Sequence record: OZ195776.1
DNA: 64,000 nucleotides
Reading direction: 5' to 3' (one strand)
A program made the translations under genes and the position numbers. How positions within the stretch are numbered: the stretch's first letter is position 1; each line of letters opens with the position of its first letter. The notes beneath the pieces were generated by a model, which saw nothing but the letters and a program-made list of their open reading frames with translations, was not told the DNA's origin and did no database searches. Of this stretch, positions 2,270-34,088 are shown one piece after another.

Positions 2270-5200
2270 TTAACGTTTGAAAAAGTCCAACAGCTTGCGC
2301 CACGTTGGTTTCTTCAATTGCTCGATTTGCTCTTGCTGCTCTTTTATAGCCTCAACTAACAAACCTACCATATTACCATACGCCACTGAATACTTGGCAT
2401 CTGCGTCGTCCTCAGTAGGACCGCCCAATACAGCTTCTGGTAACACCTCAAGCACTTCCTGTGCAATAACACCCGTTTGACGCGAACAATCATCATCGAT
2501 TCTGTCGTAGGTGTAGCCACCTAATTTCATCACTTTCTCTAACGGATTCTCAATCTTTTTGATGTTCGTCTTAACACGAAGATCTGAATATGCAGTAACG
2601 TTACCAGTACAAGTCAAGTCACCTGTGGATGATAGGGACATTTTCTCGACATACGTTACCGTTTCGCTACCAGCTGCGATACTACTATCAGTAGACCACT
2701 TCATTGCTGAGTTAACAGCATCGTTTGCTACTTCGATTTCCCACGCACTACCATCTTCTCTTGATTGATCATGAGCAAGACCGCCACCAAATCTCAAACC
2801 AACGTTGCCGCCACCATCGTTCGTGAATACTTTCATAGCACCGATAATAGCATCACCACCATTGGCATCACCTATCACCAACGAAGAATCGCCAATGTCG
2901 TTGATCTTCACACCAGCAGCAAAAGTAATCTTACCAGCAGCGGTATCACCTGCATCACTTCTCAGGAATTGACTTGCTTGTAATCCGTCAACCTTATCCG
3001 AGTCTGTGGCCTTTCCGTCACTTCTTAGGAACTGGGTTGAATTCAATCCATCCAATAGATCCGAATCAGCAGCTTTCGCGGTAATACCAAGATATCGAGC
3101 ATCTCCCTCGGATTTACTGTATACGCCAACGTGTGTTCTAACGGCACCCATGTCACTACAGAATCGAACGTAATTGTCACTACTGCTATTGACACGATAT
3201 GCAATCGCACCAGCGATCGTAGTTTGATTATTGTAAGTTGGACGAAGCAATCGACAATAAATGTCACCAGAACTGTTTCGTGCAGCGATTGTATTAGCGG
3301 TTCCACCCGTAGCTGATTGCAAACCATCCAACAGATCAGCATCTAATCCACTACCAGCGCCATCGTTATTTGCGTTCCAAATCTCATGATCGGTACCGCC
3401 GCTATCTCTCCACACAGGAGGATTTTGACTGGCTAGTCTAACATCAGCACGTCCAGTACTACCCAGATACGCCGACGTCGCATTTACTTGAAGCAATGGC
3501 TTGTTGTCAGAACCGTAAATCGTATTCATTGAATTGATTCGTTGGTTAAACGTTGCGATTGCTGAGTACGTATTAACAGCAGTCCATGTTTGGGCTTTTG
3601 TTAATTCACCAAATGCAGTACGCTGAGCGCCATCTAACAAATCCGCATCAAGTCCACTACCAGTACCATCGTTACCAGCATGCCAAACTTCGTTGTCAAG
3701 AATCTTCAATCCGGTTTGAGACAACTGCATTACGTTGGTGCTTGCGGTATTCGAGTTGTAATGGTAGTCCCAATTGAACGTTGCTTGCGCAGATGTTCCG
3801 TATCTATGCGCGTTTAACAACCAACCATAGCCTGCGGCAGATGTCGATGATGCGAATGCAATCGAAGTACGGCCAGTTGTATTGGTTGTAGTGCTCGGTT
3901 GCAATACAATAGATGCTGCATCAAAGATCGTGCCATTTGTTTGTGCTTTTGTAATATGAACTTTGTTTTTTGATACGATTCTGTTGTTGAAGTCGTTGTT
4001 ACCAGTCCATGTATTAGCACCAGCTAATTTACCAAATGATGCGTGGTCGTAACCATCCAACGAGTTTGCTTCTTGAGCATACGTGTATGCGTTTGAAATC
4101 GTCGTGCTTAGGTCTGGAATTGCGGTTGCATCGATACTGATGTCCCAACCGTCGTTCCAACGATTTGTATCTGAGTCACCGTACCCATGTTGGAAATCTC
4201 GAATCGATACTTGGGTGTATGACCAACTCGTTGTTGATTCACCGATCCAAACGCAGCAATTTGTACCATCGTGACCAAAGCGTACGTTGTAATTGTTGCC
4301 CTTTGGACCCACAATCGCAGCGCTTGCGTTCACCCACGTAGACGAGCTACCGTAGTTGTAACCACCAATCAACACCGAAAATGTATGCCCAGTTGTATAC
4401 TCATACACATCCACCCAGAATTTCATCATGGTGCTTGTCCACGATACAGGCAATGTAACTTTGATATATCCAGTTGAGGTTGAGGTTGTTGTTTCAAAAT
4501 GACCACCACCGACTGAGTGATGAATACGACCGGTACGGATACCGTTTGCCGCGCCGACGCTAAGGTTATTCGACATACCAACATCTTGGTCGCTTCGTAG
4601 GAATTGACTTCCTTGCAATCCGTCAACAGTGTCGGCATTCAGACCGCTACCAGGACCGTCGTTCCCAGCGTGCCATACTTTATTACCGTTGTATTGAATT
4701 GCATCGGTTTGACTACCAGCCCCACCATTGATTTTCAGAATGTTCTGACCGGACTTGATGTGAACGGTACGACTAGTTTCATTGTCATTCGAATCCGCAT
4801 TCAGCCAAATATCACCAACTGAAGTTAGCGTAATATCCGTTGAGTTGAACTGCAACTCATAACTCGACGCTGCTCCTCGAATGTTGTTTGTGCCCATTGT
4901 TAACAGGCCAGTCATCGTATCGCCTGAAGCGTTTATGTAACGCGCGTCTAGCGTAGTGTAACTATTGGCTGTAAAGATTTCCTTACCTAGCCAATTGAAC
5001 GTAGATCCGCTAGCTACAAAACCGTTAGTTGCGGTGGATCCAACTTGAAATCCCCCATCTGTTCTTACAAAGCTGTTACCGAAATACACGCCTGATGTTG
5101 AATCGCCAGTGTCGTTAATTCGCAACCAACTGTCAGTGGTTCGTACGACAGTTTTGCCAGCTACTTTGAAGTTGGTAACTTTGAAGTCTGCATTACCGTT

Positions 5201-13949: not shown

Positions 13950-15392
13950 TTAACCGCGGAAGAATTCCAGATCGTAGCGCTCGTTGCCAACCGCTTGCAT
14001 CATGATCTTCACAGGTTCAAGCTCACCACCCAACAAGTTGGTTAGGATGCTTGGCGAACAGCCGCTTACTAGAGCAGTGCCCACTTCACCAGACTTAACT
14101 GGTACGTTGCCGATACGACCACGTAGGTTCCAGAAAACCAGTTGTGGCATTTCGTAACCAGCTCGAGCGTACTCTTGCTTGATTACTTCCAAGTTGGTCT
14201 TCTGACCACCGCCCCAGTAACCTGCACCAGCTTGGTCGAATTCCATGTCTGACAGAATCAGCATCTTGGTTGGTAGGTCTTCTTGCGATAGACCCGCTTG
14301 AACTGCACGTTGCAATAGGACTCGGAAGACCTTGTTCACGTCAGTCGACATGTTTTCGCCTGAGCGATCCATGTTCATTAGGCGTTCGTGCAACGTTGCA
14401 CCTTTCAGTGCGTGGAAGTGTGGGTCGCTTGAGAACGAAATGAATTGGTTCTGGAAGATACCTTCATTGCGCTCTGCGATGTAAATGCCCAAAGACATTG
14501 CAACATCTTTACAAGTTACCGAACCAGTACCTGCGTTGATTGGAGTCTGCATAGAGCCAGACACGTCAACGATTGGCATGATGCGTTCGTCGCTACCTTC
14601 CATGTAGTTAGGTAGAGCCTTCCACTGTGCATCCGCTACGCGAGCATCACCTCGGTTGACTGACTTAACAATGTCGTATGGGTAAACCGCACCAGCGTTG
14701 ATCTTCTCAGTGCCTTTTTCAAGACCTTGAATGTACTGAGTGTACGTTTCCTGAGCGTTGCGACCAAACGCTTTTTGGTATCGAGCAGAAGCTACCGATG
14801 GTAGTTTGCCGAATTCAATTGCGTCCCACTCACGAGCACACATCTTCTGTTCAACGGTATCAGACAACATTGACAGAATCTTACGAAGCTGTTTGTTCTT
14901 GATATCAGCAGCTTTTGCAAGCGCTTTGAAGACATGACCGTTTGCAGACTTCTCACGAGGAGTCCACTTCGCAGCAAGGCCGTTGCGCTCGTTTACCAAC
15001 GCGTTCAGCCAAAGAGCTTCTGCATCAGCTTGAACTTGCGTACCAAAGGCAACCACAAGATCATCCCAACGACCAAGAGCTGGAACTTTGAACATTACTG
15101 CTCGCGCCAAATCTGGTTTCTCGTTACACAGTTTTGCGAATACCGTACGGAATACGTTACGCTCACCTGCACCACCACGAACGTCACGAGCCCACATCAA
15201 GATGCGAGTTGCAACTTCTTGGTTTTCACCGAACGCTCGGCTAAACAGAGTTACTGCTTCATCAGGAGTACGGCGAAGCGCACCAGCTGTGAAGAACCAG
15301 TCCAGACAAGCTGTACCGGATGTTGAATGTGTTACCGCACCGTTTTCAGTACGTGCGTCGTTTGTTTGCATTGCGTTCATAAAGTTGCTCAT
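13950..15392 (-). CDS. DUF2828-family TROVE-like/vWA protein (Ro60-related)
   Basis: TENGA, RDVRGGAGER, GRWDD, AAKWTPRE, EQKMCAREW, GAVYPYDIV, MIDAS DVSGSM, LSDMEFD, FWNL motifs. Confidence 0.85.
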   Translation of the reverse strand: MSNFMNAMQTNDARTENGAVTHSTSGTACLDWFFTAGALRRTPDEAVTLFSRAFGENQEVATRILMWARDVRGGAGERNVFRTVFAKLCNEKPDLARAVMFKVPALGRWDDLVVAFGTQVQADAEALWLNALVNERNGLAAKWTPREKSANGHVFKALAKAADIKNKQLRKILSMLSDTVEQKMCAREWDAIEFGKLPSVASARYQKAFGRNAQETYTQYIQGLEKGTEKINAGAVYPYDIVKSVNRGDARVADAQWKALPNYMEGSDERIMPIVDVSGSMQTPINAGTGSVTCKDVAMSLGIYIAERNEGIFQNQFISFSSDPHFHALKGATLHERLMNMDRSGENMSTDVNKVFRVLLQRAVQAGLSQEDLPTKMLILSDMEFDQAGAGYWGGGQKTNLEVIKQEYARAGYEMPQLVFWNLRGRIGNVPVKSGEVGTALVSGCSPSILTNLLGGELEPVKIMMQAVGNERYDLEFFRG

Positions 15393-15396
15393 TTTC

Positions 15397-15433
15397 AGAA
15401 ATCCTATTTTCAAATGTGTGCTGTATAATTTCT
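15397..15433 (-). promoter_or_regulatory. RNA-module hairpin overlapping the RBS of the DUF2828 gene
   Basis: AGAAAT-TATACAGCACAC-...-AGG-ATTTCT; same module as in eight ncRNAs at 24.8-30.2 kb. Confidence 0.6.
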
Positions 15434-15738
15434 TAACAGCGTGGCATTACCACGCCATTTTTATGGATAGTAATTTTCAGACCGTTTCCAGTCTTATTGA
15501 TGCGAACGTTCTTGTAGCCGTTTTGACGAAGAAGCTCGCTAATAATCTGACTACCCATATTCTGAGTGTCTTCGAGATGGTGTTGTATGTCCATTTCTAA
15601 GGGGAACTCTACACCATCTTTTAAAGAAGTAAACCCTTTATCCATTTCTTTTGAATAAAAATCAGTTAGAGTTTGGCGAACGTCGTGGTTTCGCTGTGTA
15701 ATCTGCTTGTTCAGATCATCGTAATGAGGAATTGTCAT
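15433..15738 (-). CDS. hypothetical protein, paralog-like to 15716-16048
   Basis: Shared ELLxxxG(Y/F)xN motif; start reassigned to MTIPH. Confidence 0.6.
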   Translation of the reverse strand: MTIPHYDDLNKQITQRNHDVRQTLTDFYSKEMDKGFTSLKDGVEFPLEMDIQHHLEDTQNMGSQIISELLRQNGYKNVRINKTGNGLKITIHKNGVVMPRC

Positions 15739-16048
15739 TGTTTGCCTTAATAATAATTCGGAACATTCGATTCGAATCGCTGAATCGGCTGTCTGGTTCG
15801 TATCCAGGGACTTTAACTTCTGCGTTTCTAAAGCCATGTAATGCCAGAAGTTCGCGCACTTGGTCAGCATGAGCTTCTGTCGTTTTGTTAACACATCCAA
15901 TTTTGATGTGGAAATCAAATGGGAATTTCCCATTTAACATACCAGAAAAGAACTTTTCAATTTCTTCACTAGCTTGTTTCTTCACCGTTTCCAGCTCACG
16001 AGCGTAACTCGCATCTGAAAGTGATTTAACTGCGTCGTACGTGATCAT
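15716..16048 (-). CDS. hypothetical protein
   Basis: ORF with GGTGG upstream; coupled to neighbours. Confidence 0.65.
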   Translation of the reverse strand: MITYDAVKSLSDASYARELETVKKQASEEIEKFFSGMLNGKFPFDFHIKIGCVNKTTEAHADQVRELLALHGFRNAEVKVPGYEPDSRFSDSNRMFRIIIKANNDNSSLR

Positions 16049-16945: not shown

Positions 16946-17275
16946 TTATTTTCGAACAAATAGCGAACCAATTTGACGATATTGTTGTGTGTATTCCAAT
17001 AGCTTGCTCATTTTCATACGAGCAACAGGATTTGATGTTACCAACATTACACGATGCGGCAAGTTGTTAGCATCAATCGCACACGATAAGATATCGTATC
17101 CTTCGTGACCAGGAGTTTCATCATCCAAGTCGTTATCCATCAACAATGTAATGTCTTGCAAGTTTGTGTGTTTAACAAAGGACATTCCCTCATCAAACGT
17201 ACGAATCACCAGCTTTTTGTCACTAGGACGTACGAACTGATTGATGTCTCGGAGATCGTCGATTAGTACGAACAT
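16946..17275 (-). CDS. cyclic-phosphate processing receiver-like domain protein
   Basis: LIDDLR, LLMDNDL...EGYD and VTSNPVAR motifs. Confidence 0.65.
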   Translation of the reverse strand: MFVLIDDLRDINQFVRPSDKKLVIRTFDEGMSFVKHTNLQDITLLMDNDLDDETPGHEGYDILSCAIDANNLPHRVMLVTSNPVARMKMSKLLEYTQQYRQIGSLFVRK

Positions 17276-24807: not shown

Positions 24808-24816
24808 AAAATAACT

Positions 24817-24876
24817 GGATACGTTTGTCTTTTTTTTCAAATAAAAAATTAGATTTAATGTTTGCTGAATGTATCC
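24817..24876 (-). ncRNA. minimal motif RNA
   Basis: GGATAC-ATTCAGCAAAC...GTATCC end-to-end stem. Confidence 0.55.
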
Positions 24877-24882
24877 ATAAAC

Positions 24883-25948: not shown

Positions 25949-26033
25949 TGGTACGGGTAGCGGGAGTCGAACCCGCACCTCCTAAGAGAGTGGATTTTAA
26001 GTCCACAGCATATGCCAATTTCGCCATACCCGT
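25949..26033 (-). tRNA. tRNA-Leu(TAA)
   Basis: Type II cloverleaf. Confidence 0.95.
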
Positions 26034-26040
26034 ATAAATT

Positions 26041-26127
26041 TGGTGCCAGTGGCCGGACTCGAACCGGCACGGTATTTCTACCACAGGATTTTGAATCCTG
26101 CGCGCCTACCAATTACGCCACACTGGC
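26041..26127 (-). tRNA. tRNA-Leu(CAA)
   Basis: Type II cloverleaf. Confidence 0.95.
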
Positions 26128-26128
26128 T

Positions 26129-26206
26129 TGGAGCTGCGTGAGGGATTCGAACCCCCGAAGCTTGGATTTGCAATCCAGTACATTAGACCAACTCTGCCAA
26201 CACAGC
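26129..26206 (-). tRNA. tRNA-Cys(GCA)
   Basis: Cloverleaf with CCA. Confidence 0.95.
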
Positions 26207-26293
26207 ATTTTTCAAGTTCACACTTTTGATTAGTACGGTAGTGACTCTCCGTAATGTGGTGACCCGCCGTGGACTCGAACCACGCCCTATCGA

Positions 26294-26770
26294 TTATTCT
26301 GAACGCTCTGTGCGTCTGCGTCTATACGTTGATGTTTGTGAATGACAATTTGGACACAACCAGGATAGGTTTTCCTTCCGATTATCGTTGCTAATTCCAT
26401 TAACATGTTCCAGCTCCAATGTAAGAGGTTTCCCATTCCAAGTATCCGGAATTCCACACTCATCACAGTGGTTTCGATAGAACCCTAATCGAATTGATAT
26501 TTGTCGGGCGCTGCTACGAGGTGCAGTGCAATTCTCTACAAAGAACGATTCTTCGGTGTGTGAAAATTTATTACGCTTAAACGTCTTTTTAACATCAAAG
26601 TGTTCAGTAGACACGTCGTACTTATCACACAGCACTTTCAATCGATTTATATTGTATGTACAGACCGTTATACCAACACCACGGCACACATCACTCCAAC
26701 AAAACGAATCACTTGCTACGGTGATTAGCTGTTCTAACGTATAGTGCTTAAAATCTTTATTGCTTTTCAT
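26294..26770 (-). mobile_element. HNH homing endonuclease inside the tRNA anticodon loop
   Basis: CDECG...LELEHVNGISNDNRKENLSWLCPNCHSQT. Confidence 0.9.
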
Positions 26771-26775
26771 TTTCT

Positions 26776-26814
26776 ACTCCTACTGCTGATGTGTTATTTA
26801 TACAGCAGTAGGAG
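26776..26814 (-). promoter_or_regulatory. late promoter in an RBS-sequestering hairpin
   Basis: CTCCTACTGCTG-TATAAATA-ACACAT-CAGCAGTAGGAG. Confidence 0.85.
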
Positions 26815-26863
26815 ATAATGAGTCGATTGCTCTCAACCAGGTGAGCTATCGGGCCACATAAAC

Positions 26864-26940
26864 TGGAGCAAGTGACGGGACTCGAACCCGCGACCACCGA
26901 CTTGGAAGGACGGAACTCTACCAACTGAGTTTACACTTGC
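26864..26940 (-). tRNA. tRNA-Gly(TCC)
   Basis: Cloverleaf with CCA. Confidence 0.95.
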
Positions 26941-26946
26941 AAAACT

Positions 26947-27051
26947 GGATGTACAAAATAGCTCACCATTACCTCAACCCAGAGTAACGTTAGTCTTTTA
27001 CGACTTGGCTCCTGATATGTAATTTTAGGTTATTGTTTGCGGTAGACATCC
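26947..27051 (-). ncRNA. stand-alone motif RNA
   Basis: GGATGT-CTACCG-CAAA...TTTG-T-ACATCC end-to-end stem with internal loop. Confidence 0.6.
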
Positions 27052-27079
27052 AAGGTCGAACCTTGACGAATCAAGATCT

Positions 27080-27409
27080 TTAAAACTGTTCACCTTTCGG
27101 CTCTTCGGTATTTAGAAGAGTAACCAAATCGTTTAGCGCATTATACTTGTTTATTTCAAGTTTTGTCGCTGGACGAAGGATTTCAGTGCTTTCCCAAGAA
27201 TGAGATGTGTAGTGTTCAACATCATGAACCCAATCCCAATTGTGTAGATATGCACTATCCGGAAGTTTAATGGAATGTTTGAAGTTGGTTTTCAACTTAC
27301 GTAAAAGAGTATCTGTGCTAACTGAGCCAGAGTAAACCGCTTTTGCCAATTGTTCATCGGTAATTCGCAATTTTCTTGTAACCAGTTCGCTACCTTCAAT
27401 CATGTTCAT
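27080..27409 (-). CDS. hypothetical protein, paralog of 27406-27717
   Basis: Shared (I/V)TDEQL, W..D and LR(P/K)AT..EI motifs. Confidence 0.75.
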   Translation of the reverse strand: MNMIEGSELVTRKLRITDEQLAKAVYSGSVSTDTLLRKLKTNFKHSIKLPDSAYLHNWDWVHDVEHYTSHSWESTEILRPATKLEINKYNALNDLVTLLNTEEPKGEQF

Positions 27410-27717
27410 TTCTTCATCCCGTATTCGTGACGTAGAACATTGATTGCATCATAGATCGCAATCTCACCCATTGTTGCTTTGCGAAGAAACTTCTTCTCGA
27501 TCCAGCGACCGGTACCATCCATATCTTGGTGGTAATGCCAATTGCCGTGTTCTAAGAATGCTTCTTTACGAAGCTCACCTTGCTTGCGCAGGTTCAATCC
27601 AAGTTTGTCAATCAGAACCTCAGATGGTATAGAACCGTCTGAGAACGCTTCTAAGAGCTGTTCGTCTGTAACTTGAATCTCACAAGGAACAAGACGAGTA
27701 CCTTTAATAGTATTCAT
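27406..27717 (-). CDS. hypothetical protein, paralog of 27080-27409
   Basis: GAGG SD; same motifs as neighbour. Confidence 0.75.
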   Translation of the reverse strand: MNTIKGTRLVPCEIQVTDEQLLEAFSDGSIPSEVLIDKLGLNLRKQGELRKEAFLEHGNWHYHQDMDGTGRWIEKKFLRKATMGEIAIYDAINVLRHEYGMKK

Positions 27718-27736
27718 TATATCCTCTTTAAATGAG

Positions 27737-27812
27737 TGGCACGCCTGGAGGGATTCGAACCCACGACCCGAAACTTAGAAGGTTCCTGCTCTTCCAACTG
27801 AGCTACAAGCGC
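27737..27812 (-). tRNA. tRNA-Arg(TCT)
   Basis: Cloverleaf with CCA. Confidence 0.95.
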
Positions 27813-27813
27813 A

Positions 27814-28248
27814 TTATTTCAACGTAAATTTCAAATTGCGATAATTGTACTTAGAGCCGTTATTACGACAAGTGTTAGTCCAGAAGTCACTCCAATCAAT
27901 TTTGACGGGACATTTATCTGATCCAACGCGAGTACAGAACACATCCAAGTGCGGATATTTCAATTGCAGGTTAGCTGCCGTTTGGCGAACTGCCAGTGCA
28001 TGCTCAGTACGTCTTTTAGCAAGTTCTCTACGAGAGTACGTGTTTTGCCAAAAATGACTACGCCAAATATTAACACGCTTCTCATCCCAACCCATGCTAA
28101 ACGAATGTTCAACATAACCAGATAATTTACCAGTTTTAGGGTCACGAGCGAATATTGCGTAACAACGATGTCGAGTGAAATCGGTTCGTTCATATTTGTC
28201 GCAGTTAATAACGTTACCTTTCTTGGTGGTACGAGAGTGTTTAATCAT
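27814..28248 (-). CDS. hypothetical basic protein
   Basis: GAGG SD before MIKHSR. Confidence 0.6.
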   Translation of the reverse strand: MIKHSRTTKKGNVINCDKYERTDFTRHRCYAIFARDPKTGKLSGYVEHSFSMGWDEKRVNIWRSHFWQNTYSRRELAKRRTEHALAVRQTAANLQLKYPHLDVFCTRVGSDKCPVKIDWSDFWTNTCRNNGSKYNYRNLKFTLK

Positions 28249-28426
28249 CGGACACCTCGAAAGATTTAAAGCGTTTATCGAACTCACTTAGACAAGTATC
28301 AGCCCAAGACGTTGCTACGTCTTTTTCTCTGCAATCATTTGCATTTGCTGTTGATGTCCACGCTCGAACCCACACATCACGACGTTGTTCTTCGTGACGA
28401 GCTTCTGCTTTTGTAAATTTTGGCAT
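28241..28426 (-). CDS. hypothetical protein
   Basis: GAGG SD before MPKFTK. Confidence 0.65.
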   Translation of the reverse strand: MPKFTKAEARHEEQRRDVWVRAWTSTANANDCREKDVATSWADTCLSEFDKRFKSFEVSDD

Positions 28427-28439
28427 TTTAATTTCCTCT

Positions 28440-28711
28440 TGATGCCCCACCGTGGATTCGAACCACGCAGTCCATTCATTTTCCTAATACGCAAGGGGCT
28501 TGTTAGATTTAGAACCTTAACGTCAATAGAAACTACAATTCATCGCTTTCCTGGTGTTAATAACTAACACTGCTTTCACACCAGTAATTACTCAACTCTG
28601 TATCTCAATGAAACAAGTTCGTCGGTGAAATTGTCGTTAATTAGACGACGCATTCTCGGAACAAGTTAGTCTGAGCATGACCATGTCAACGGTCTCCAGT
28701 TAGAATGGGGC
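28440..28711 (-). ncRNA. tmRNA-like RNA with non-Ala acceptor stem
   Basis: GCCCCAT/GTGGGGC stem, T arm, P2-like pairings and an internal 17-codon frame (I)NDNFTDELVSLRYRVE. Confidence 0.5.
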
Positions 28712-28733
28712 TTTGTTTAATACATAATGTAAT

Positions 28734-28852
28734 CGGCCGGTGTAGGACTCGAACCTACGACCACGAGCTTAACGGGCTATTGAGTTTAGTGTGCGGTATC
28801 GATTCTTGACAGAATCATTTCATACGTGCTCTACCAACTGAGCTAACCGGCC
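28734..28852 (-). ncRNA. tRNA-shaped RNA with motif insert replacing the anticodon loop
   Basis: Intact acceptor/D/T arms; insert GATTCT-GTCA-AGAATC-GATACCGCACAC; no CCA. Confidence 0.75.
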
Positions 28853-28862
28853 ATAATTTATT

Positions 28863-29270
28863 TTACTCTGATTTAACATCCAAAGTAAACAGTTTTGCAT
28901 TGCTTTCTTTCATCGGTTGAACGCCGACTATTTCTTCTGCAAGTAACGATGGGACAACTTGCTTCGGAATTTTGACGGTAACGCCACTTTCCTTTGCTTG
29001 CTCGCGAAGTTCTTTTGAACGTTCACGTAACATTGCAAGATGTTCTTCACGTTTTGTTACTATGTCATCAAGGTGCTCGTCGATAGTACCGATTTCGTAC
29101 TTCTCACCGTAAGCAAAGGCAGTATGCCAGTGAATCTTTTTAAATTCAGCAATCTGCTTGATGTCTTTGATGACGCGTACTTCGTCGTAAACCCAACCAC
29201 AGTTGATACATTCAATTGCGATTTGATCTCCGTTTTCATCGAAGAATAAAGCGTTACTTGGTAAACTCAT
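28863..29270 (-). CDS. hypothetical protein with a gp23-like C-terminal motif
   Basis: PSLLAEEIVGVQPM resembles the major capsid protein P-x-L-I-A-x-x-I-x-GVQPM motif. Confidence 0.65.
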   Translation of the reverse strand: MSLPSNALFFDENGDQIAIECINCGWVYDEVRVIKDIKQIAEFKKIHWHTAFAYGEKYEIGTIDEHLDDIVTKREEHLAMLRERSKELREQAKESGVTVKIPKQVVPSLLAEEIVGVQPMKESNAKLFTLDVKSE

Positions 29271-29296
29271 AATATAATCTCACGAAATAAAACAAT

Positions 29297-29426
29297 TGGT
29301 AGAGGGTGCAGGATTCGAACCTGCGCCACGGAATTTAAGAGTTTCAATGCAATTTTGGTTGCCGCAACTATTCTTTCCAGAATAATGTTTGTGCTACGTG
29401 TGCTTGCCGTTTTACACCAACCCTCT
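29297..29426 (-). ncRNA. tRNA-shaped RNA with motif insert
   Basis: AGAGGGT/ACCCTCT-A-CCA; insert TATTCT-GGAA-AGAATA-GTTGCGGCAACC. Confidence 0.7.
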
Positions 29427-29525
29427 ACGAATTGTTCTAGTTGATAGATTCTGAGTTCATCTTTCACACTCAAGGTTCTATCGGACCTGCGGCTAAGTGA
29501 CTAAGCTTCGCCGTTAAAATAAACA

Positions 29526-29666
29526 GGATGTACAAATCTTCTGGTGCGTTTTCCAATTCGCTACCTCCCCGTCGATACATTATTGGTGGGGAGGGTTGGG
29601 ATTCGAACCCAACTCATCACAAAAGTGAACCAGTTCTACTCGATTAATATTACGCTGTAGACATCC
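29526..29666 (-). ncRNA. circularly permuted tRNA-like RNA (YrlA-type topology)
   Basis: GGATGT-CTACAGCG...T arm-CCTCCCC-ACCA-linker-GGGGAGG-D arm...ACATCC. Confidence 0.7.
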
Positions 29667-29672
29667 TTAAAT

Positions 29673-29750
29673 TGGCCAGTAGTAAGGGACTCGAACCCAA
29701 GCACGGACTCCACGAGGGCGACTGCTTTACCTAACATAAGCTAAACTACT
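29673..29750 (-). pseudogene. degenerate tRNA with unpaired anticodon stem
   Basis: Acceptor, D and T arms and CCA present; anticodon arm does not pair. Confidence 0.55.
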
Positions 29751-29758
29751 TTCAAATT

Positions 29759-29877
29759 TGGCGCGTGTGACAGGACTCGAACCTGTGACCTCCGGCGGGA
29801 TTAATGTAATTGCTGTAACGATTCATTACTGAATCCATTTATTAGGCCGGCATTCTAACCAACTGAATTACACACGC
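29759..29877 (-). ncRNA. tRNA-shaped RNA with motif insert (Asp-like D arm)
   Basis: GCGTGTG/CACACGC-G-CCA; insert GATTCA-GTAA-TGAATC-GTTACAGCAATT. Confidence 0.75.
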
Positions 29878-29884
29878 GATGTTA

Positions 29885-30028
29885 AAAACAATTTGAGCAG
29901 CGTACAGGATTCGAACCTGTGTTACCTCCTGGAAATGGAATTAGCGTTAGTTGCTGAAAGCATCTTTACCAAGATACATTGCTTTTAGGTGTCCTAGGCC
30001 ACTAGACGAACGCTGCTCAAATTGTTTT
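29885..30028 (-). ncRNA. tRNA-shaped RNA with motif insert (Glu-like D arm) and extended acceptor stem
   Basis: Insert GTATCTT-GGTA-AAGATGC-TTTCAGCAACT; ~18-bp terminal inverted repeat; no CCA. Confidence 0.75.
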
Positions 30029-30034
30029 TATTAA

Positions 30035-30177
30035 GTCTTATTGCCGGCGGGGCTGGATTCGAACCAGCGACCTCGTGCTCCCTATGCAATTAATAATTGG
30101 TTGCGGTACCCAATCTTTTCAGATTGGTTTATTAATACGCGCGCTAACCTGACTGCGCTACCCGCCGGCAATAAGAC
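30035..30177 (-). ncRNA. tRNA-shaped RNA with motif insert and extended acceptor stem
   Basis: Insert CCAATCT-GAAA-AGATTGG-GTACCGCAACC; ~17-bp terminal inverted repeat; no CCA. Confidence 0.75.
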
Positions 30178-30246
30178 CTAATTGTGTTCATATCTTCCCA
30201 AAGAGACAGCAACGATATGACTGGGCTGCTTAATCAACTTGCGGTT

Positions 30247-30276
30247 ACTATATAATCAAATGATTCAGAAGTAAAC
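30247..30276 (-). promoter_or_regulatory. T4-type early promoter heading the ncRNA/tRNA array
   Basis: GTTTAC-16/17 nt-TATATAGT. Confidence 0.55.
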
Positions 30277-30292
30277 CGTTTTTTACATCTTC

Positions 30293-30478
30293 CTAAAAGA
30301 GGCGGTAACGATGTAACAGGACCGCTTTTGCAACCGTAGTTGCTTCAACAGGGCTTACTATCTGATAGTTAATTTCAAAAGTAAACCGCTTTTTTCTACA
30401 TCCGAGATGGATCAAGAATGATGCCAGCTTCGGATACTCCACAACGTTGAGCTTCCTGCATATTTTGCAATTGGGCAA
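30293..30478 (-). CDS. possible small hypothetical protein
   Basis: 61-aa ORF; start uncertain. Confidence 0.35.
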   Translation of the reverse strand: MPNCKICRKLNVVEYPKLASFLIHLGCRKKRFTFEINYQIVSPVEATTVAKAVLLHRYRLF

Positions 30479-30656
30479 CAGCGTGTTGAAGTTCTGTTAG
30501 AAGTTTTTCGTACATACTCTGATTGTCTTTTAGTAGCGCAATCTGATCCGACTGCATGCCAACAATGTAAGTCAACAGAATGACGTTTTCCGGATCGGTA
30601 AGTGATTCCGGATCTTCGTGGTACTTAGCAAGTACCAATTGAGTTTCATTATCCAT
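30396..30656 (-). CDS. hypothetical coiled-coil protein
   Basis: Start reassigned to MDNETQ. Confidence 0.55.
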   Translation of the reverse strand: MDNETQLVLAKYHEDPESLTDPENVILLTYIVGMQSDQIALLKDNQSMYEKLLTELQHAVAQLQNMQEAQRCGVSEAGIILDPSRM

Positions 30657-30732
30657 AGTAAATCTCATTTGACAACAATTAATTTGTGATTTAATTATAC
30701 GCAAAGAAAAAGCGGGATAAACCCGCTTCTTT

Positions 30733-31023
30733 TTAGTGATCTTCCGAACCGTATTCCCAATCGTCATACAATTCATCAGCACCCTTTTCGTTTCTTCCTA
30801 CCCAGATATCTTCCGGTTCCAGAACATTCACATCAGAGCCATTTACAACGCCCCAGAACACGATATACTCGCCGTTACGTTTGATTGCTTTGAATACATA
30901 ACTGTTCTTCGGAACTGCCTTAGAATCGAATCTACGGCGTTCTACGACCGTTTCGATAGCATGAGCAAGATTAACGAATCTCCAGTTCATAGTTGCTTCT
31001 GAATAGAAGTCCATAAAACCCAT
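30733..31023 (-). CDS. hypothetical protein
   Basis: GGAG SD; followed by a terminator at about 30707-30735. Confidence 0.6.
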   Translation of the reverse strand: MGFMDFYSEATMNWRFVNLAHAIETVVERRRFDSKAVPKNSYVFKAIKRNGEYIVFWGVVNGSDVNVLEPEDIWVGRNEKGADELYDDWEYGSEDH

Positions 31024-31025
31024 CG

Positions 31026-31454
31026 TTATCTCCTTGTAAGCAAGAAATTACCGTTGCTGAATGAATACGCATATCCAATATCGCCAGCAAATCGTCTAGT
31101 TAAACGCTCATAGAGTTTCTTACGTGACGGTTCGTTATCTGCCGCCTCGAAGTACAAATACATTGGTTGGTGATCGTGTAGCACCTCACGTACACCAGCT
31201 AACACTGTTCCCAATACAGTCAACTCACTGCCCGTACCAGTAATACTCATATCTTGACCACGATCTCCAATTAACGCGAAGCTAATCGTCATCATGTCTT
31301 TCTGATATTCATACGAGGTTGTTAGTACGTACGTTTCTCCACCCACTTCAAACTCACCGTGTGATTGGTCGTGGGTATAGTTGTTGCTGTGATTCCAACG
31401 AATTGGTACAGATCTCTTGAGCGCCTCAACCATGTATGTTTGAAGCGTCTTCAT
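31026..31454 (-). CDS. putative internal head protein, paralog 1
   Basis: MKTLQTYMVEA capsid-targeting-like N-terminus; SRKKLYERL motif. Confidence 0.75.
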   Translation of the reverse strand: MKTLQTYMVEALKRSVPIRWNHSNNYTHDQSHGEFEVGGETYVLTTSYEYQKDMMTISFALIGDRGQDMSITGTGSELTVLGTVLAGVREVLHDHQPMYLYFEAADNEPSRKKLYERLTRRFAGDIGYAYSFSNGNFLLTRR

Positions 31455-31455
31455 A

Positions 31456-32157
31456 TTACCATTCCTCGAATGTAGCGTAAGCGTCATCGATATCGTCAGT
31501 TACGTACGAATCATCTTGATCAAGAATAATGTGACGTTTGCTTGTACCACGAACCACACCTGAGATAACAACAACATCGAAGCCGTCTTGCGACATGCCA
31601 AGAATTACCATTTCTTTACCAGGTTTCAACCAACGGAACTCACGAACTTCGAATGGGAACATCAAATCGTTTGAGTTATCGATTGCCAATTGCACTTCTT
31701 CTTCTGTCCATTCTGCATCTTTGCGTTGTGCACGAACAAGAGTGTATTTGTTGCGATCGATTGTAAATGTGTAACCAGCGTCTTCTGCAAAGCGCTTAAC
31801 AAGACGGTCGTACAATTTCTTACGGCTATCTCGTTTGTCGTCATGTTCGTAAGCAGTGAAGAAAATCTTCGTCGGGCTCTTGCGATCAATGTACTCTTTC
31901 ACAGCTTTTAAAACTGAGGTGATAACTTTTAGCGTTTCGCTTGGTGAACCAGTTACGTTATTCGCAGAGACATTCATTCTGCCGCGTTCATTAACAGAAC
32001 CGTAAGCTACTTCGGTGTATCCACCAAAACCAGCAAATTCAATCACATACTGCGTTGAACCAACACGGAAGTTCGCGTCGTTGTCGTTTTTCCATTGAAT
32101 TGGTGCGGCTTTCGCTAAGTCAAGCGCTTCCACCATAAATTGTTTAAAGTCGTTCAT
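31456..32157 (-). CDS. putative internal head protein, paralog 2
   Basis: MNDFKQFMVEA; SRKKLYDRL motif. Confidence 0.75.
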   Translation of the reverse strand: MNDFKQFMVEALDLAKAAPIQWKNDNDANFRVGSTQYVIEFAGFGGYTEVAYGSVNERGRMNVSANNVTGSPSETLKVITSVLKAVKEYIDRKSPTKIFFTAYEHDDKRDSRKKLYDRLVKRFAEDAGYTFTIDRNKYTLVRAQRKDAEWTEEEVQLAIDNSNDLMFPFEVREFRWLKPGKEMVILGMSQDGFDVVVISGVVRGTSKRHIILDQDDSYVTDDIDDAYATFEEW

Positions 32158-32161
32158 TTCA

Positions 32162-32941
32162 TTACCTATCGTATTCGATGCGATGCTTATCAAGCACCTT
32201 GTAAGTTTCTGGATTTTTGAAAGATGTGCGCATATGTTTGACGTAACCGTTGGAGTAACCGTTAGCAGCCATCATCTCTCCAATCATTTTATCCAACGTG
32301 TCGACGTAATCGCCAAGAGGACCGATATGAGATAGATCAACCACACCAGTAGTTGGTTCGTCTTCCATTGGATGAATGTTTACCACAACACCACCTGCGC
32401 CATTCGAGAACATACCAACACGTTTTTGGTCATTCTGATAGTTGATATCGTACAACACGCCTTTTGGAGCGTCTTTAACCAAATCATATTGCATTTTGTT
32501 CTTGAACGTGGCTGTTGATAACGAGTAACCGTATTGTTTACCCATTTTCTTAAACAACATCGAATACAGACGTTCGCGCTTCTTACGAAACTCTTCGTTT
32601 GAATCAGGATATGCCCAAGTTTGAATGCGAGTTGGTGAACACCAATCCATTGCTTGTTTTGCTGCTTCAATAACTGTCGCGAAAACTTGCAAAGCGTTAT
32701 CGGTGTCTGTTTGATCGTTTGTCCAATCTCGCTTAGATGCATCGAACGCCATGAAATGAATTTCCATGAGGTCGCTGGTCTTTTCCTCTGTCACGCCGCG
32801 ATGAATAACGATCGCTTTGTACATCACCTTACCAACTTGAAATATCCCCTCAAGTGGTCGATCGGAACGAACAGCATTGCTTTTCCAAGTAATCCGAGCT
32901 GGTTTATCAAACGCTTCAGTTAAGAAGGTTCTGAATTCCAT
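32162..32941 (-). CDS. putative internal head protein, paralog 3
   Basis: MEFRTFLTEA; KRERLYSML motif. Confidence 0.75.
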   Translation of the reverse strand: MEFRTFLTEAFDKPARITWKSNAVRSDRPLEGIFQVGKVMYKAIVIHRGVTEEKTSDLMEIHFMAFDASKRDWTNDQTDTDNALQVFATVIEAAKQAMDWCSPTRIQTWAYPDSNEEFRKKRERLYSMLFKKMGKQYGYSLSTATFKNKMQYDLVKDAPKGVLYDINYQNDQKRVGMFSNGAGGVVVNIHPMEDEPTTGVVDLSHIGPLGDYVDTLDKMIGEMMAANGYSNGYVKHMRTSFKNPETYKVLDKHRIEYDR

Positions 32942-32994
32942 TTGATTTCCTTTTAATATAGCTATATGGGACTACTTATACAAAAAGAGCGCCA

Positions 32995-33450
32995 TTAGGC
33001 GCTCTTCTCAACCCAGTCTAAATCCAGTGGTTCGCTATACTCGTCAATTAAATTGATGGGTTGCGAAATGTCCAGTGGTTTGACTGCATCGTCATATGAC
33101 AATGTTATGTGTGCGTTGTACTCAGGAAAATCGTGAGTACCGCCTGCATCGATTAAATCATCGTGTCGATTTTTCAACCCTTCCGATTTCAATTTAACGA
33201 TGACTACTGACTTGCCTTCTTGATCTTTCCAACTATCAACTCGATAGGCTTCCGCGTCATACGAGTTACCGGTAGATGGAACTTCAATCCCATTACGACT
33301 GTATAACACAGTCGCGTGAAACTTACTTGATTCAAGAGGATTGTTCAGTTTGAGCGTTTTCTGCAGCTCTTGTAACCATTCAGAGCTCGCAGAGTCTACT
33401 TTGACACCAACATAAGTGCCTTGGTTTTCAAGAAACTGCTGAAACTTCAT
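32995..33450 (-). CDS. acb1: anti-CBASS 2H phosphodiesterase Acb1 (gp57B)
   Basis: HATVLYS and HITLSY 2H motifs, GGTHDFPEY, EPLDLDW; T4 57B position. Confidence 0.9.
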   Translation of the reverse strand: MKFQQFLENQGTYVGVKVDSASSEWLQELQKTLKLNNPLESSKFHATVLYSRNGIEVPSTGNSYDAEAYRVDSWKDQEGKSVVIVKLKSEGLKNRHDDLIDAGGTHDFPEYNAHITLSYDDAVKPLDISQPINLIDEYSEPLDLDWVEKSA

Positions 33451-33707
33451 TACTCGCCTTCTGCTTCGGTCTCAACCGGTTCGTAAGCTGCAAGTTTTTC
33501 TTTTAGCTCAACAACACGATCGATGTAATTTTGTAGAGATTGTGCATCTTCGCCTTCGATAGAAAGCAATTCTGCTAGAATATTCACAAATTGAGAAATG
33601 TGCTGACGCTCACCGTTAAGAGCTTCTTGAAGATCGAATGTACGAACTTTCAGTTCTTTTAGTTGGCCGTTCAGCGCTTCAAATTGTTTTTCAGGGGTTT
33701 GTTGCAT
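33450..33707 (-). CDS. 57A: tail fibre chaperone gp57A
   Basis: LKVRTFDLQE coiled coil; directly upstream of 57B. Confidence 0.75.
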   Translation of the reverse strand: MQQTPEKQFEALNGQLKELKVRTFDLQEALNGERQHISQFVNILAELLSIEGEDAQSLQNYIDRVVELKEKLAAYEPVETEAEGE

Positions 33708-33782
33708 TTTAATCACCATTGTTTAAACAGGATGAGCTTTCGCTCGGATACATGTACTTAGATTTAAAATTGTATAGTAAAT

Positions 33783-34088
33783 CTACTCAGGATAAACTTC
33801 GTCGTTCATATAATCTGCAAAGTCATCTTCTTCTGCGGCAATACCGTCAAGTACGTTTAGCATATCCGAAATGCTTAACATATTGTGTTCCGCTAGTACA
33901 AAGTAGTAGACTTCGTCGTAACTTACCGAGTAGCCAAGCGATTTACTTGTTGTTAAAATAATTTCTGTTGCTTCCGAGTACGGGAATATTCTTTCTTTCG
34001 TATCGAAATCGTCTCCACCAGCTACGTCTGTCGGCTCATAACCGTAAGGCGCAAGTGAGTGGGCCAGTGCTTTAATGTGGTCATTCAT
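33783..34088 (-). CDS. hypothetical protein
   Basis: GGAGG SD; promoter-like GTTTAT...TG-TACTAT upstream. Confidence 0.65.
   Translation of the reverse strand: MNDHIKALAHSLAPYGYEPTDVAGGDDFDTKERIFPYSEATEIILTTSKSLGYSVSYDEVYYFVLAEHNMLSISDMLNVLDGIAAEEDDFADYMNDEVYPE

What the first reader, a model, noticed from the sequence alone, without database searches (positions are those of the whole stretch)
15397..15433. The RNA module overlaps the ribosome-binding site of the DUF2828 gene: probable autoregulation
Seen: TAAGAAAT-TATACAGCACAC-ATTTGAAAATAGG-ATTTCT-GAAA-ATG. AGAAAT pairs with ATTTCT, whose first base is part of the SD AGGA, 9 nt before the ATG. The core closely matches the copy at 28734 (GATACCGCACAC). 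Inference: free protein binds its own mRNA and represses translation until titrated by the ncRNAs. This is the main internal link between the protein and the RNA family.
Basis: partly seen in the sequence, partly recalled or inferred. Interest (0 to 1): 0.75.

Follow-up and report, generated by a model that had tools for sequence, protein, structure and literature searches.

The report
Partner-RNA mimic in mRNA leader
The 40 bases in front of a phage gene for a Ro60-like RNA-binding protein are a stripped-down copy of the small RNAs that accompany this gene family in many phages. The copy sits on the ribosome-binding site, so the protein probably limits its own synthesis, and the RNAs look like the 'Class I' RNAs so far reported only from social amoebae.

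Summary
On the minus strand of Vibrio phage D479, AGAAAUU (15433-15427) pairs with GAUUUCU (15403-15397) around ACAGCACAC. The 3' arm covers the last two Shine-Dalgarno bases and ends 4 nt before the AUG.

It is not chance. A covariance model built only from other phages' RNAs ranks this leader second in the 64-kb window (21.4 bits, E about 0.005). Homologous leaders in more than 10 related phages keep the motif at the translation start.

The element belongs to a large RNA family: AAG, a 6-8 bp stem joining the ends, UUACAGCAA, a variable stretch, then CUG(U/A). The family lies next to DUF2828 genes on the gene's strand in 126 of 127 model matches. The D479 protein models as a Ro60 fold.

The family also occurs fused to tRNA-like domains (five copies in the window). 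Its closest Rfam family, below threshold, is Dictyostelium Class I RNA.

Autoregulation is the best reading, but binding and repression are untested. In many phages the adjacent RNA is full-sized, lies downstream of the gene or well upstream, and is probably free-standing.

The parts
15395..15435 (-). Minimal Class-I-like/Y-like RNA module that fills the whole intergenic gap: UAAG, helix, ACAGCACAC, spacer, helix, CUGA
   Evidence: Sequence. R1 match of 21.4 bits, E 0.005, model positions 1-60.
15427..15433 (-). 5' helix arm AGAAAUU. Its first A is the last base of the upstream ORF's UAA stop codon.
   Evidence: The same arm, GAAAUU, occurs in L098.
15416..15424 (-). Single-stranded core motif ACAGCACAC (family consensus UUACAGCAA)
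15397..15403 (-). 3' helix arm GAUUUCU. It covers G and A of the SD and the SD-AUG spacer.
   Evidence: L098 has the same GAUUUC arm after its SD.
15402..15405 (-). Shine-Dalgarno AGGA, 9 nt before the AUG
   Evidence: Read directly from the sequence.
13950..15392 (-). DUF2828 + DUF7788 (vWA, MIDAS DxSxS) protein gene, 480 aa, Ro60-like predicted fold
   Evidence: Pfam. PHROG 850 'RNA-binding protein'. AlphaFold model with pLDDT 87.7. The top 11 PDB matches are all Ro60/TROVE.
15433..15933 (-). Upstream ORF (166 aa, PHROG 15675) whose stop codon overlaps the start of the module. No promoter-like site lies between it and the DUF2828 gene.
24814..24879 (-). Free-standing small RNA of the family, in the tRNA block
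   Evidence: R1 match of 37.9 bits, E 2.5e-7. Its best Rfam match is RF01414 at 20.4 bits.
26944..27054 (-). Long family member with an 84-nt insert between the motif and the 3' arm
   Evidence: (14 bits, E 0.44). This assignment is weak.
28734..28852 (-). tRNA-like RNA whose anticodon arm carries the module closed as a hairpin (GAUUCU-GUCA-AGAAUC, then GAUACCGCACAC)
29297..29426 (-). tRNA-like RNA with a hairpin-closed module (core UGCGGCAAC)
29762..29877 (-). tRNA-like RNA with a hairpin-closed module (core UUACAGCAAUU)
   Evidence: Rfam tRNA match of 59.6 bits with a 45-nt insert. Also.
29895..30017 (-). tRNA-like RNA with a hairpin-closed module (core UUUCAGCAAC)
30044..30167 (-). tRNA-like RNA with a hairpin-closed module (core GUACCGCAACC)
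   Evidence: Rfam tRNA match of 44.4 bits. Also.

Best explanation
The 40-nt gap before the DUF2828 gene is a cis-encoded minimal copy of the RNA element that partners this Ro60-fold protein family. The element is AAG, then a 6-8 bp helix joining the two ends, then single-stranded UACAGCA(A/C) right after the 5' arm, and finally CUG(A/U). The free RNAs carry this element with a long variable or tRNA-like body. The leader copy keeps only the helix and the motif, and its 3' arm lies on the SD and spacer (D479, L098) or on the start codon itself (KVP40 clade).

The most likely mechanism is as follows. The protein recognises the helix plus motif on its own mRNA. Binding locks a helix that is too weak to matter alone (-3.7 kcal/mol) and occludes the 30S binding site, which represses the protein's own translation. 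The abundant, better-matching partner RNAs compete for the protein. Synthesis therefore continues until protein exceeds RNA, which is the feedback logic of ribosomal proteins and rRNA.

- Shown: family membership of the leader, its conservation and placement at the translation start, the Ro60-like fold, and the RNA-gene linkage.
- Inferred: protein-RNA binding, repression and titration.
For: 1. Membership. R1, built without any D479 or leader sequence, finds the leader as the second-best hit in the window. It also finds the held-out leaders of L080, L077, L035, L036/37/40 and the VH7D/nt-1/KVP40 group.

2. Homologous leaders.
   - ACAGCA sits 26-32 nt before the AUG in KVP40, VH7D, nt-1, K575/K566, 1.081.O, F86, L096, L097 and L098.
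   - In these phages GACAUU pairs with AAUGUC, which contains the start codon. 93% of cells pair, against 20-40% when the partner is slid. L097 shows a compensatory GACAUA/UAUGUC change.
   - D479 and L098 instead use GAAAUU/GAUUUC next to the SD.
   - D483/D491s have a replaced leader behind a homing endonuclease gene, yet carry UUACAGCAA overlapping the AUG.

3. All full-length plus-strand R1 matches of 47 nt or less with E < 0.1 are DUF2828 leaders that abut the RBS. Free family members are 52-83 nt or longer and score 30-58 bits.

4. RNA-gene linkage.
   - 126 of the 127 R1 matches from those four searches are on the DUF2828 strand.
   - They lie directly upstream or downstream of the gene in Vibrio, Felix O1-like, Listeria, Campylobacter, Enterococcus and Staphylococcus phages, and weakly in a mycobacteriophage.

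5. Protein. The best PDB matches to the model are all Ro60, with E 1e-8 to 4e-6 and TM 0.5-0.63 over the full length.
Against: - There are no binding or expression data.
- The leader scores are modest: 16-26 bits, with roughly calibrated E-values.
- The D479 core departs from the consensus at two near-invariant positions (A for U before ACAGCA, and a final C for A).
- Covariation inside the leader clade is thin: one compensatory pair plus one helix switch.
- In L076, L077, L080 and CP30A the last module ends 20-33 nt before the AUG and is full-sized. In many loci the RNA lies downstream of the gene, and those leaders have no motif. Adjacency alone could therefore explain an RNA copy just upstream.
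- L095 has a degenerate motif.
- The loci were collected through the protein. The reverse association, RNA without DUF2828, could not be settled.
Confidence: 0.55

Rival explanations
1. The element is simply one more, decayed or miniaturised, small-RNA gene of the family that lies next to the protein gene, as Y RNA genes lie next to rsr. It is cut out of the polycistronic transcript, or is non-functional. Its overlap with the RBS would be incidental, or would matter only because excision at ...CUG|A would sever the SD from the ORF.
For: - Arrays of full-sized family RNAs lie directly upstream of the gene in L035, L077, L078, L080, LP-125 and CP30A, or directly downstream in FO1a, the Staphylococcus phage and many IMG/VR loci.
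- The conserved AAG and CUG(U/A) ends look like defined RNA termini.
- In L077 the last module is followed by a U-run.
Against: - In D479 the module exactly fills the gap between a stop codon and the RBS, with no promoter or terminator of its own.
- The KVP40-clade copies lie downstream of a GTTTAC-N17-TATAAT promoter and include the start codon, so they are part of the mRNA.
- The minimal size class is found only at DUF2828 translation starts.
- The motif reappears at the AUG in the rearranged D483 leader.
Confidence: 0.2
2. The element is a cis element that works without the DUF2828 protein. It could be a processing or stability signal, or a translational-coupling device, read by a host or phage factor (an RNase or chaperone) that also handles the free RNAs. 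The shared motif would then reflect a shared processing machinery rather than a shared binding protein.
For: - The family RNAs sit in tRNA clusters and must be processed from long transcripts.
- In D479 the upstream ORF's stop codon overlaps the 5' arm, so terminating ribosomes would open the helix.
- RNA ligase and RtcB-like genes lie near these loci.
Against: - The only gene constantly next to the RNAs in very different phages is DUF2828, a Ro60-fold protein whose relatives bind exactly this kind of stem-plus-loop RNA.
- A processing signal does not explain why the minimal copy is found at this gene's start and not at other genes in the window.
Confidence: 0.12
3. The resemblance is chance: an AU-rich intergenic spacer with a short inverted repeat and a 10/12 match to one tRNA-like RNA.
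For: Word and pattern counts and the folding energy of the leader alone are not significant.
Against: - The covariance-model rank and score.
- Conservation of motif, spacing (AG-N7-ACAGCA) and flanks in homologous and unrelated DUF2828 leaders.
- The antisense control.
Confidence: 0.03

Closest known systems
Dictyostelid Class I RNAs (Rfam RF01414; Kjellin et al. 2021, PMC7919456)
   Same: - About 60 nt long, starting AAG with a conserved 5' G paired to the C of a 3' CUGU.
- A 6-bp stem joining the ends, in which structure rather than sequence is kept.
- An 11-nt unpaired motif CCUUACAGCAA directly after the 5' arm, followed by an A/U-rich variable remainder.
- The phage consensus is AAAGGAUnnUUACAGCAAuU...AUCCUG(U/A).
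- RF01414 is the best non-tRNA Rfam match, over its full length, for three phage RNAs.
   Different: - Scores are 20-32 bits, below the gathering score of 41.5.
- There is no DUSE promoter.
- The RNAs are phage-encoded, sit in tRNA clusters, and are often fused to tRNA-like domains.
- The published work reports Class I RNAs as unique to Dictyostelia, with Rnp1A as the known binder.
- Homology versus convergence is not settled.
- The D479 leader itself gets no RF01414 hit.
Ro60 - Y RNA / YrlA ribonucleoproteins (Chen et al. 2014, PMC4201824; Thermus phage phiLo Ro60-Yrl1/2, PMC12135203)
   Same: - A ring-plus-vWA protein.
- Small RNAs encoded next to the protein gene on the same strand.
- A terminal stem with the presumed protein site.
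- A tRNA-like domain on many copies. The permuted forms in L035 and L040 have the YrlA topology.
   Different: - The protein is DUF2828/DUF7788, not TROVE, by sequence.
- The RNA has UUACAGCAA in place of the GNCGAAN0-1G / CGAA Ro60 site.
- In D479 the element is inserted in the anticodon arm of otherwise complete tRNA-like RNAs.
- I know of no autoregulatory leader copy described for Ro60 (own knowledge; none appeared in the papers read).
Translational autoregulation by target mimicry (ribosomal protein operators; phage T4 gp32, RegA, gp43) - from established knowledge
   Same: An RNA-binding protein's own mRNA carries, at the ribosome-binding site, a reduced copy of its main RNA target. Free protein would repress, and the main target would compete.
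   Different: Binding and repression are untested here. The protein family and the RNA target are different.
Bas63 gp130 (PhageMaP preprint, PMC11482910)
   Same: A Ro60-like protein of a Felix O1-like phage, placed directly upstream of the tRNA block. The authors guessed that some 'tRNA genes' are Y RNAs, and reported that it counters the Ppl defence. The Felix O1-type phage FO1a has a DUF2828 gene (gp42) in that position, followed by four family RNAs.
   Different: Orthology of gp130 with DUF2828 was not verified here. No RNA partner or leader element was defined in that work.

Membership tests
Dictyostelid Class I RNA (RF01414) | Score at or above the Rfam gathering threshold (41.5 bits) | tested here: not met
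   The leader has no RF01414 hit at E <= 10. The window RNA at 24817-24876 scores 20.4 bits. The best phage member, L051, scores 31.9 bits.
Dictyostelid Class I RNA (RF01414) | Short stem joining the 5' and 3' ends, 5' (AA)G paired to the C of a 3' CUGU | tested here: met
   The leader reads UAAG...CUGA with a 7-bp stem. In the family, 92% of cells pair against about 40% when slid, and 57 cells change on both sides. The caveat is that those sequences had been picked with a helix filter. Fresh loci show new stem sequences.
Dictyostelid Class I RNA (RF01414) | 11-nt motif next to the 5' arm with invariant U3, C6, C9, A10, A11 | tested here: inconclusive
   The phage family consensus UUACAGCAA meets all five positions. 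The D479 leader has A at position 3 and C at position 11, so it meets 3 of 5.
Dictyostelid Class I RNA (RF01414) | Length 42-65 nt with a variable remainder | tested here: met
   Free phage members are 52-73 nt. The leader is 41 nt, at the lower edge.
Dictyostelid Class I RNA (RF01414) | DUSE promoter about 60 nt upstream; dictyostelid genome | tested here: not met
   The context is a phage. The KVP40-clade leaders have a sigma-70-type promoter, and D479 has none nearby.
Y RNA / YrlA | Encoded near, and on the same strand as, a Ro60-family gene | tested here: met
   126 of 127 R1 matches are on the DUF2828 strand. Most lie within a few hundred nt of the gene. In D479 the leader abuts the gene and the others are 9-15 kb upstream.
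Y RNA / YrlA | Ro60-binding motif GNCGAAN0-1G / CGAA in the stem | tested here: not met
   The motif is absent. The conserved element is UUACAGCAA.
Y RNA / YrlA | Match to the Rfam Y RNA/YrlA models | tested here: not met
   Only tRNA matches reach gathering scores in the window. Nothing appears at E <= 1 in 26000-34000.
Y RNA / YrlA | tRNA-like domain | tested here: not met
   The leader has none. Five other window RNAs, and the permuted RNAs in L035 and L040, do have one.
Ro60 / TROVE protein | TROVE domain detectable by sequence (Pfam PF05731) | tested here: not met
   Only DUF2828 and DUF7788 are found, even at E <= 10. phmmer against PDB finds no Ro60.
Ro60 / TROVE protein | Helical-repeat ring plus C-terminal vWA domain with a MIDAS motif | tested here: met
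   The Foldseek top 11 are all Ro60 over the full length. D276, S278 and S280 are invariant in 45 homologues.
Autogenous translational operator (target mimicry) | Operator overlaps the SD or start codon of the regulator's own mRNA | tested here: met
   In D479 and L098 the 3' arm lies on the SD and spacer. In the KVP40 clade, L096 and L097 it lies on the AUG. In L035 and L036/37/40/55 the SD starts at the end of the helix.
Autogenous translational operator (target mimicry) | Operator resembles the regulator's main RNA target | tested here: met
   R1, built from free RNAs, recognises the leaders.
Autogenous translational operator (target mimicry) | The protein binds the operator and represses translation; the target RNA relieves repression | not testable with these tools
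   This needs binding assays, toeprinting and reporters.

The most novel reading that the evidence does not exclude
The phage RNAs and the dictyostelid Class I RNAs are one RNA family. Its stem-plus-UUACAGCAA element would be the docking site of DUF2828 proteins, a sequence-divergent branch of the Ro60 fold found in phages, giant viruses and eukaryotes. Class I RNAs would then be the 'Y RNAs' of DUF2828 proteins. The D479/KVP40 leader copies would be operators that match protein output to partner-RNA supply.
Probability: 0.3. Interest if true: 0.9.

Novelty: new variant of a known kind. Interest (0 to 1): 0.8.

Why it matters
**A protein family gains a partner RNA.** DUF2828 has at least 7,900 clusters at 90% identity and is present in Felix O1-, KVP40-, P100- and CP30A-type phages. 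This work assigns it a defined partner RNA and a concrete, testable regulatory circuit.

**A second Ro60-type RNP.** The results point to a Ro60-type ribonucleoprotein with a different recognition motif. It is often tethered to tRNA-like bodies and lies in loci that also carry RNA ligases. A likely relative of the protein has been linked experimentally to counter-defence (PMC11482910).

**An open question becomes testable.** The RNA has the defining features of the Dictyostelium Class I RNAs, whose mechanism has been open since 2004 and which were reported as unique to social amoebae. The direct experiment is whether a DUF2828 protein binds stem + UUACAGCAA.

**A compact substrate.** The leader mimic is the smallest natural version of the site, at 41 nt, and is therefore the handiest substrate for that test.

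Tried and rejected
- **Word and pattern counts in the window** were too degenerate to be significant.
- **Single-sequence folding of the leader** was not significant.
- **RNAalifold on seven leaders** gave only the start-codon helix, with almost no covariation.
- **Rfam at gathering scores** found tRNAs only.
- **Y RNA/YrlA identity** was rejected. The CGAA-type motif is absent and there are no Rfam hits.
- **TROVE by sequence** was not detected. **PADLOC** gave nothing.
- **Reverse association** was inconclusive.
  - An exact-pattern scan of IMG/VR returned 80 loci.
  - About 20 of them had a helix partner, and only 4 of those held a DUF2828 gene in the stretch fetched.
  - The stretches are short, and D479 itself keeps most of its RNAs 9-15 kb from the gene.
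- **The search for eukaryotic, especially dictyostelid, DUF2828 proteins** failed. The 120 listed hits were all phage or metagenome proteins.
- **A guessed Bas63 accession** turned out to be another phage.
- **A long-range partner inside the ORF** (GUGUCU(A/G)A about 90 nt into the gene in K575, F86 and D483) was considered. It was left open because it codes a conserved Cys-Leu.
- **The helix statistics** are partly circular, because the sequences had been selected with a helix filter.

Full report
**Where we are.** The window is part of Vibrio phage D479 (OZ195776.1, 257.8 kb, KVP40-like). The genes concerned are on the minus strand. The DUF2828 gene is 13950..15392 (480 aa; Pfam DUF2828 + DUF7788; PHROG 850 'RNA-binding protein'). 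An upstream ORF (15433..15933; PHROG 15675) ends with UAA at 15435-15433.

**Checking the observation.**
- The sequence is as described.
- AGAAAUU (15433-15427) pairs with GAUUUCU (15403-15397), giving six Watson-Crick pairs and one U.G pair.
- ACAGCACAC lies 2 nt after the 5' arm.
- The SD AGGA (15405-15402) shares G and A with the 3' arm.
- The helix ends 4 nt before the AUG (15392).
- The compared copy GAUACCGCACAC is in a tRNA-like RNA at 28852..28734.

Simple statistics do not carry the case. The 11-mer, a degenerate pattern and the leader's folding energy (-3.7 kcal/mol, z -1.35) are all compatible with chance. The evidence comes from comparison.

**The RNA family.** I fetched 80 IMG/VR loci that encode relatives of the protein, plus annotated phage records. 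A scan looked for a helix strand followed within 0-3 nt by [A/U/G]C[A/C/G]GCA[A/C], with a partner strand nearby.

With the helix required to open with AG and close with CU, there were 91 hits on the DUF2828 strand and 4 on the other strand. On the antisense strand, 776 motif occurrences gave no short module.

Twenty-six short members from other phages align at both ends. The consensus is AAAG, GAUnn, UUACAGCAA, about 30 A/U-rich nt, nnAUC, CUG(U/A). The stem pairs in 92% of cells, against about 40% when the partner is slid, with 57 double changes. These sequences had been chosen with a helix filter, so that count is partly circular.

Covariance model R1 was built from them, with no D479 sequence and no element within 100 nt of a DUF2828 start. 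Its matches were:
- 38 in 16 loci, all on the gene's strand;
- 69 in 69 further loci, all on the gene's strand;
- 18 of 19 on the gene's strand in six named phages fetched afterwards: Felix O1-type FO1a, Listeria LP-125, Campylobacter CP30A, Enterococcus 113, Staphylococcus S-CoN_Ph2 and mycobacteriophage Faith1 (a single weak match).

The RNAs lie in arrays directly upstream of the gene or directly downstream of it.

**Other forms of the same element.** In D479, K575 and KVP40 the element is closed as a hairpin inside the anticodon arm of otherwise complete tRNA-like RNAs. There are five in the window. The two ends are joined as ...CUG-N1-2-AAG..., and the spacing AG-N7-NC[ACG]GCA is the same as in the free RNAs.

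In L035 and L040 the order is permuted. The RNA starts with AG-helix-ACAGCAA, runs through a T arm, a closed acceptor stem and a D arm, and ends with the partner strand ...CUG. That is the topology of YrlA.

**The leader belongs to the family.** With filters off, R1 gives two clear hits in the 64-kb window.
- A free RNA at 24879..24814 scores 37.9 bits (E 2.5e-7).
- The leader at 15435..15395 scores 21.4 bits (E 0.005) and is aligned end to end, including UAAG and CUGA.

The held-out elements just upstream of other DUF2828 genes are also recovered:

| Locus | Score (bits) |
|---|---|
| L080 | 39.4 |
| L077 | 37.4 |
| L035 | 25.8 |
| L036/37/40 | 22.4 |
| VH7D | 19.5 |
| nt-1 | 17.6 |
| KVP40 | 16.5 |

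Phages whose protein is 59-72% identical to D479's keep ...GACAUU-WW-ACAGCAA... 26-32 nt before the AUG. In the listed isolates (KVP40, VH7D, nt-1, K575/K566, 1.081.O, F86) a GTTTAC-N17-TATAAT promoter lies upstream of it, so the element is in the 5' UTR.
- **Start-codon helix.** GACAUU pairs with AAUGUC, which contains the start codon. L096 has the same helix (23.7 bits). L097 has GACAUA/UAUGUC, a compensatory change.
- **SD-spacer helix.** L098 (61% identity) has the D479 solution instead: GAAAUU ... AAGAGGAUUUCAGAAUG.
- **Replaced leader.** D483 and D491s carry a homing-endonuclease gene upstream and a different leader. Yet UUACAGCAA overlaps the AUG there.
- **Unrelated lineages.** In L035 and L036/37/40/55 the SD (GAAAGGAGG, GAAGGAG) begins at the last base of the 3' ...CUGA.
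- **Size class.** Full-length R1 matches of 47 nt or less with E < 0.1 are all such leaders. Free members are longer and score higher.

This separates a minimal, RBS-abutting class from the ordinary RNAs, and it is the main argument for a cis-regulatory role. The limits should be stated plainly. Covariation within the leader clade amounts to one compensatory pair and one helix switch. One relative (L095) has a degenerate motif. Many DUF2828 genes have no leader element at all.

**The protein.** An AlphaFold model from a 40-sequence alignment is confident (pLDDT 87.7, pTM 0.87). Its 11 best PDB matches are all Ro60 proteins: Thermus phage phiLo, Deinococcus Rsr, Xenopus and human. They have E 1e-8 to 4e-6 and TM 0.5-0.63 over the full length. 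After them come isolated vWA domains.

Sequence methods do not see TROVE. A MIDAS DxSxS motif is invariant. The protein is therefore a sequence-divergent Ro60-fold protein.

**Mechanism.** The most economical reading combines these facts. The protein binds helix + UACAGCA on its partner RNAs. A reduced copy of that site sits on its own translation start. Bound protein would stabilise a helix too weak to block ribosomes alone and would occlude the 30S site. Partner RNAs, being better matches and probably more abundant, would compete.

In D479 there is one further feature. The upstream ORF's stop codon lies in the 5' flank of the module, so terminating ribosomes would open the helix, which could couple the two genes.

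Binding, repression and titration are all inferences. The main rival is that the leader copy is just a shrunken neighbour RNA gene.

**Comparison with known systems.**
- **Y RNA/YrlA.** The architecture and gene linkage are shared. The Ro60-binding motif (GNCGAAN0-1G, PMC4201824; CGAA in phiLo Yrl1/2, PMC12135203) is absent, and no Rfam Y RNA model matches.
- **Dictyostelium Class I RNA.** Unexpectedly, the best Rfam family for three phage members is RF01414 Dicty_Class_I_RNA. The matches are full-length and below threshold: 22.7, 31.9 and 20.4 bits against a gathering score of 41.5.
  - The RF01414 consensus is a 6-bp terminal stem, then CCUUACAGCAAU, then an A/U-rich stretch, then CUG.
  - Kjellin et al. 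describe the same features: start AAG, 5' G paired to the C of a 3' CUGU, a covarying 6-bp stem, an 11-nt motif with invariant U3, C6, C9, A10 and A11, and a length of about 60 nt. They conclude the class is unique to Dictyostelia.
  - The phage family meets all these structural features but not the Rfam threshold or the eukaryotic promoter.
  - DUF2828 proteins exist in plants and mimivirus-like sequences. Whether dictyostelids have one could not be tested here.
- **Bas63 gp130.** A preprint reports this Ro60-like protein upstream of the tRNA block. It counters the Ppl defence, and the authors guess that some tRNA genes are Y RNAs. FO1a, of the same genus, has a DUF2828 gene followed by four family RNAs.
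- **Literature check.** I found no paper in the library that links DUF2828 to an RNA family or to Class I RNAs.

**Verdict.** As a mechanism it is a new variant of a known kind: target-mimic translational feedback within a Ro60-type RNP. The context it exposes, a widespread DUF2828-associated RNA family with the hallmarks of Class I RNAs, is the more surprising result.

Noticed in passing
window 28734-30167 (minus strand): Five tRNA-like RNAs of 116-130 nt are annotated as tRNAs in the GenBank record. Each has an intact acceptor, D and T arm, and a ~45-nt insert replacing the anticodon loop. The insert is the family element closed as a hairpin.
   Followed up: partly
L035 9425-9557 and 9797-9924; L040 9838-9945: Circularly permuted tRNA-like RNAs. 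The 3' half (T arm, acceptor 3' strand) is encoded before the 5' half (acceptor 5' strand, D arm), and the two RNA ends form the AG...CUG helix. This is the YrlA topology, sitting directly upstream of the DUF2828 gene.
   Followed up: partly
L051 4377-4429; L059 11572-11624; window 24817-24876: Rfam RF01414 (Dictyostelium Class I RNA) is the top non-tRNA family for these phage RNAs. The matches are full-length but below the gathering score (31.9, 22.7 and 20.4 bits).
   Followed up: partly
window 15439-15455: A G+C-rich hairpin (GCGUGG...CCACGC) lies inside the 3' end of the upstream ORF. On the plus strand it is followed by a T-run and scores as terminator-like, although no plus-strand gene ends there. 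On the minus strand it sits 3 nt before the module.
   Followed up: no
L083 and L085 (phages D483, D491s), 1-400: A homing-endonuclease gene is inserted, in divergent orientation, just upstream of the DUF2828 gene. The leader and first codons are replaced, yet UUACAGCAA overlaps the new start codon.
   Followed up: partly
window 29440-29760 and 28440-28500 (minus strand): Further fragments end in GGTTCGAATCC-type T arms but have no complete tRNA. ARAGORN also calls a 'tRNA-???' with a 4-base anticodon at 29895-29982. These may be more degenerate or permuted tRNA-like RNAs.
   Followed up: no
L082 (K575) 17070-17090; L087 (F86) about 480-491; L083 about 470-485: The 5' arm AGACAU of the KVP40-type leaders can also pair with GUGUCU(A/G)A about 90 nt into the ORF (codons Cys-Leu). 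This would give an alternative, 130-nt version of the module ending in ...CUGA in F86.
   Followed up: no
L001 651-1106; L082 3395-3850; L092 5355-6500; L095 and L097 downstream genes: RNA ligase or RtcB-like genes, and an RNase H-like gene (PF04308), recur near the DUF2828 gene or the tRNA-like RNAs. This recalls the rsr-yrlA-rtcBA RNA-repair operon.
   Followed up: no
L089 (Salmonella phage FO1a) 3916-5413: The stretch after gp42 (DUF2828) has no annotated gene but holds four family RNAs (4253-4323, 4420-4481, 4874-4945, 4961-5089).
   Followed up: partly
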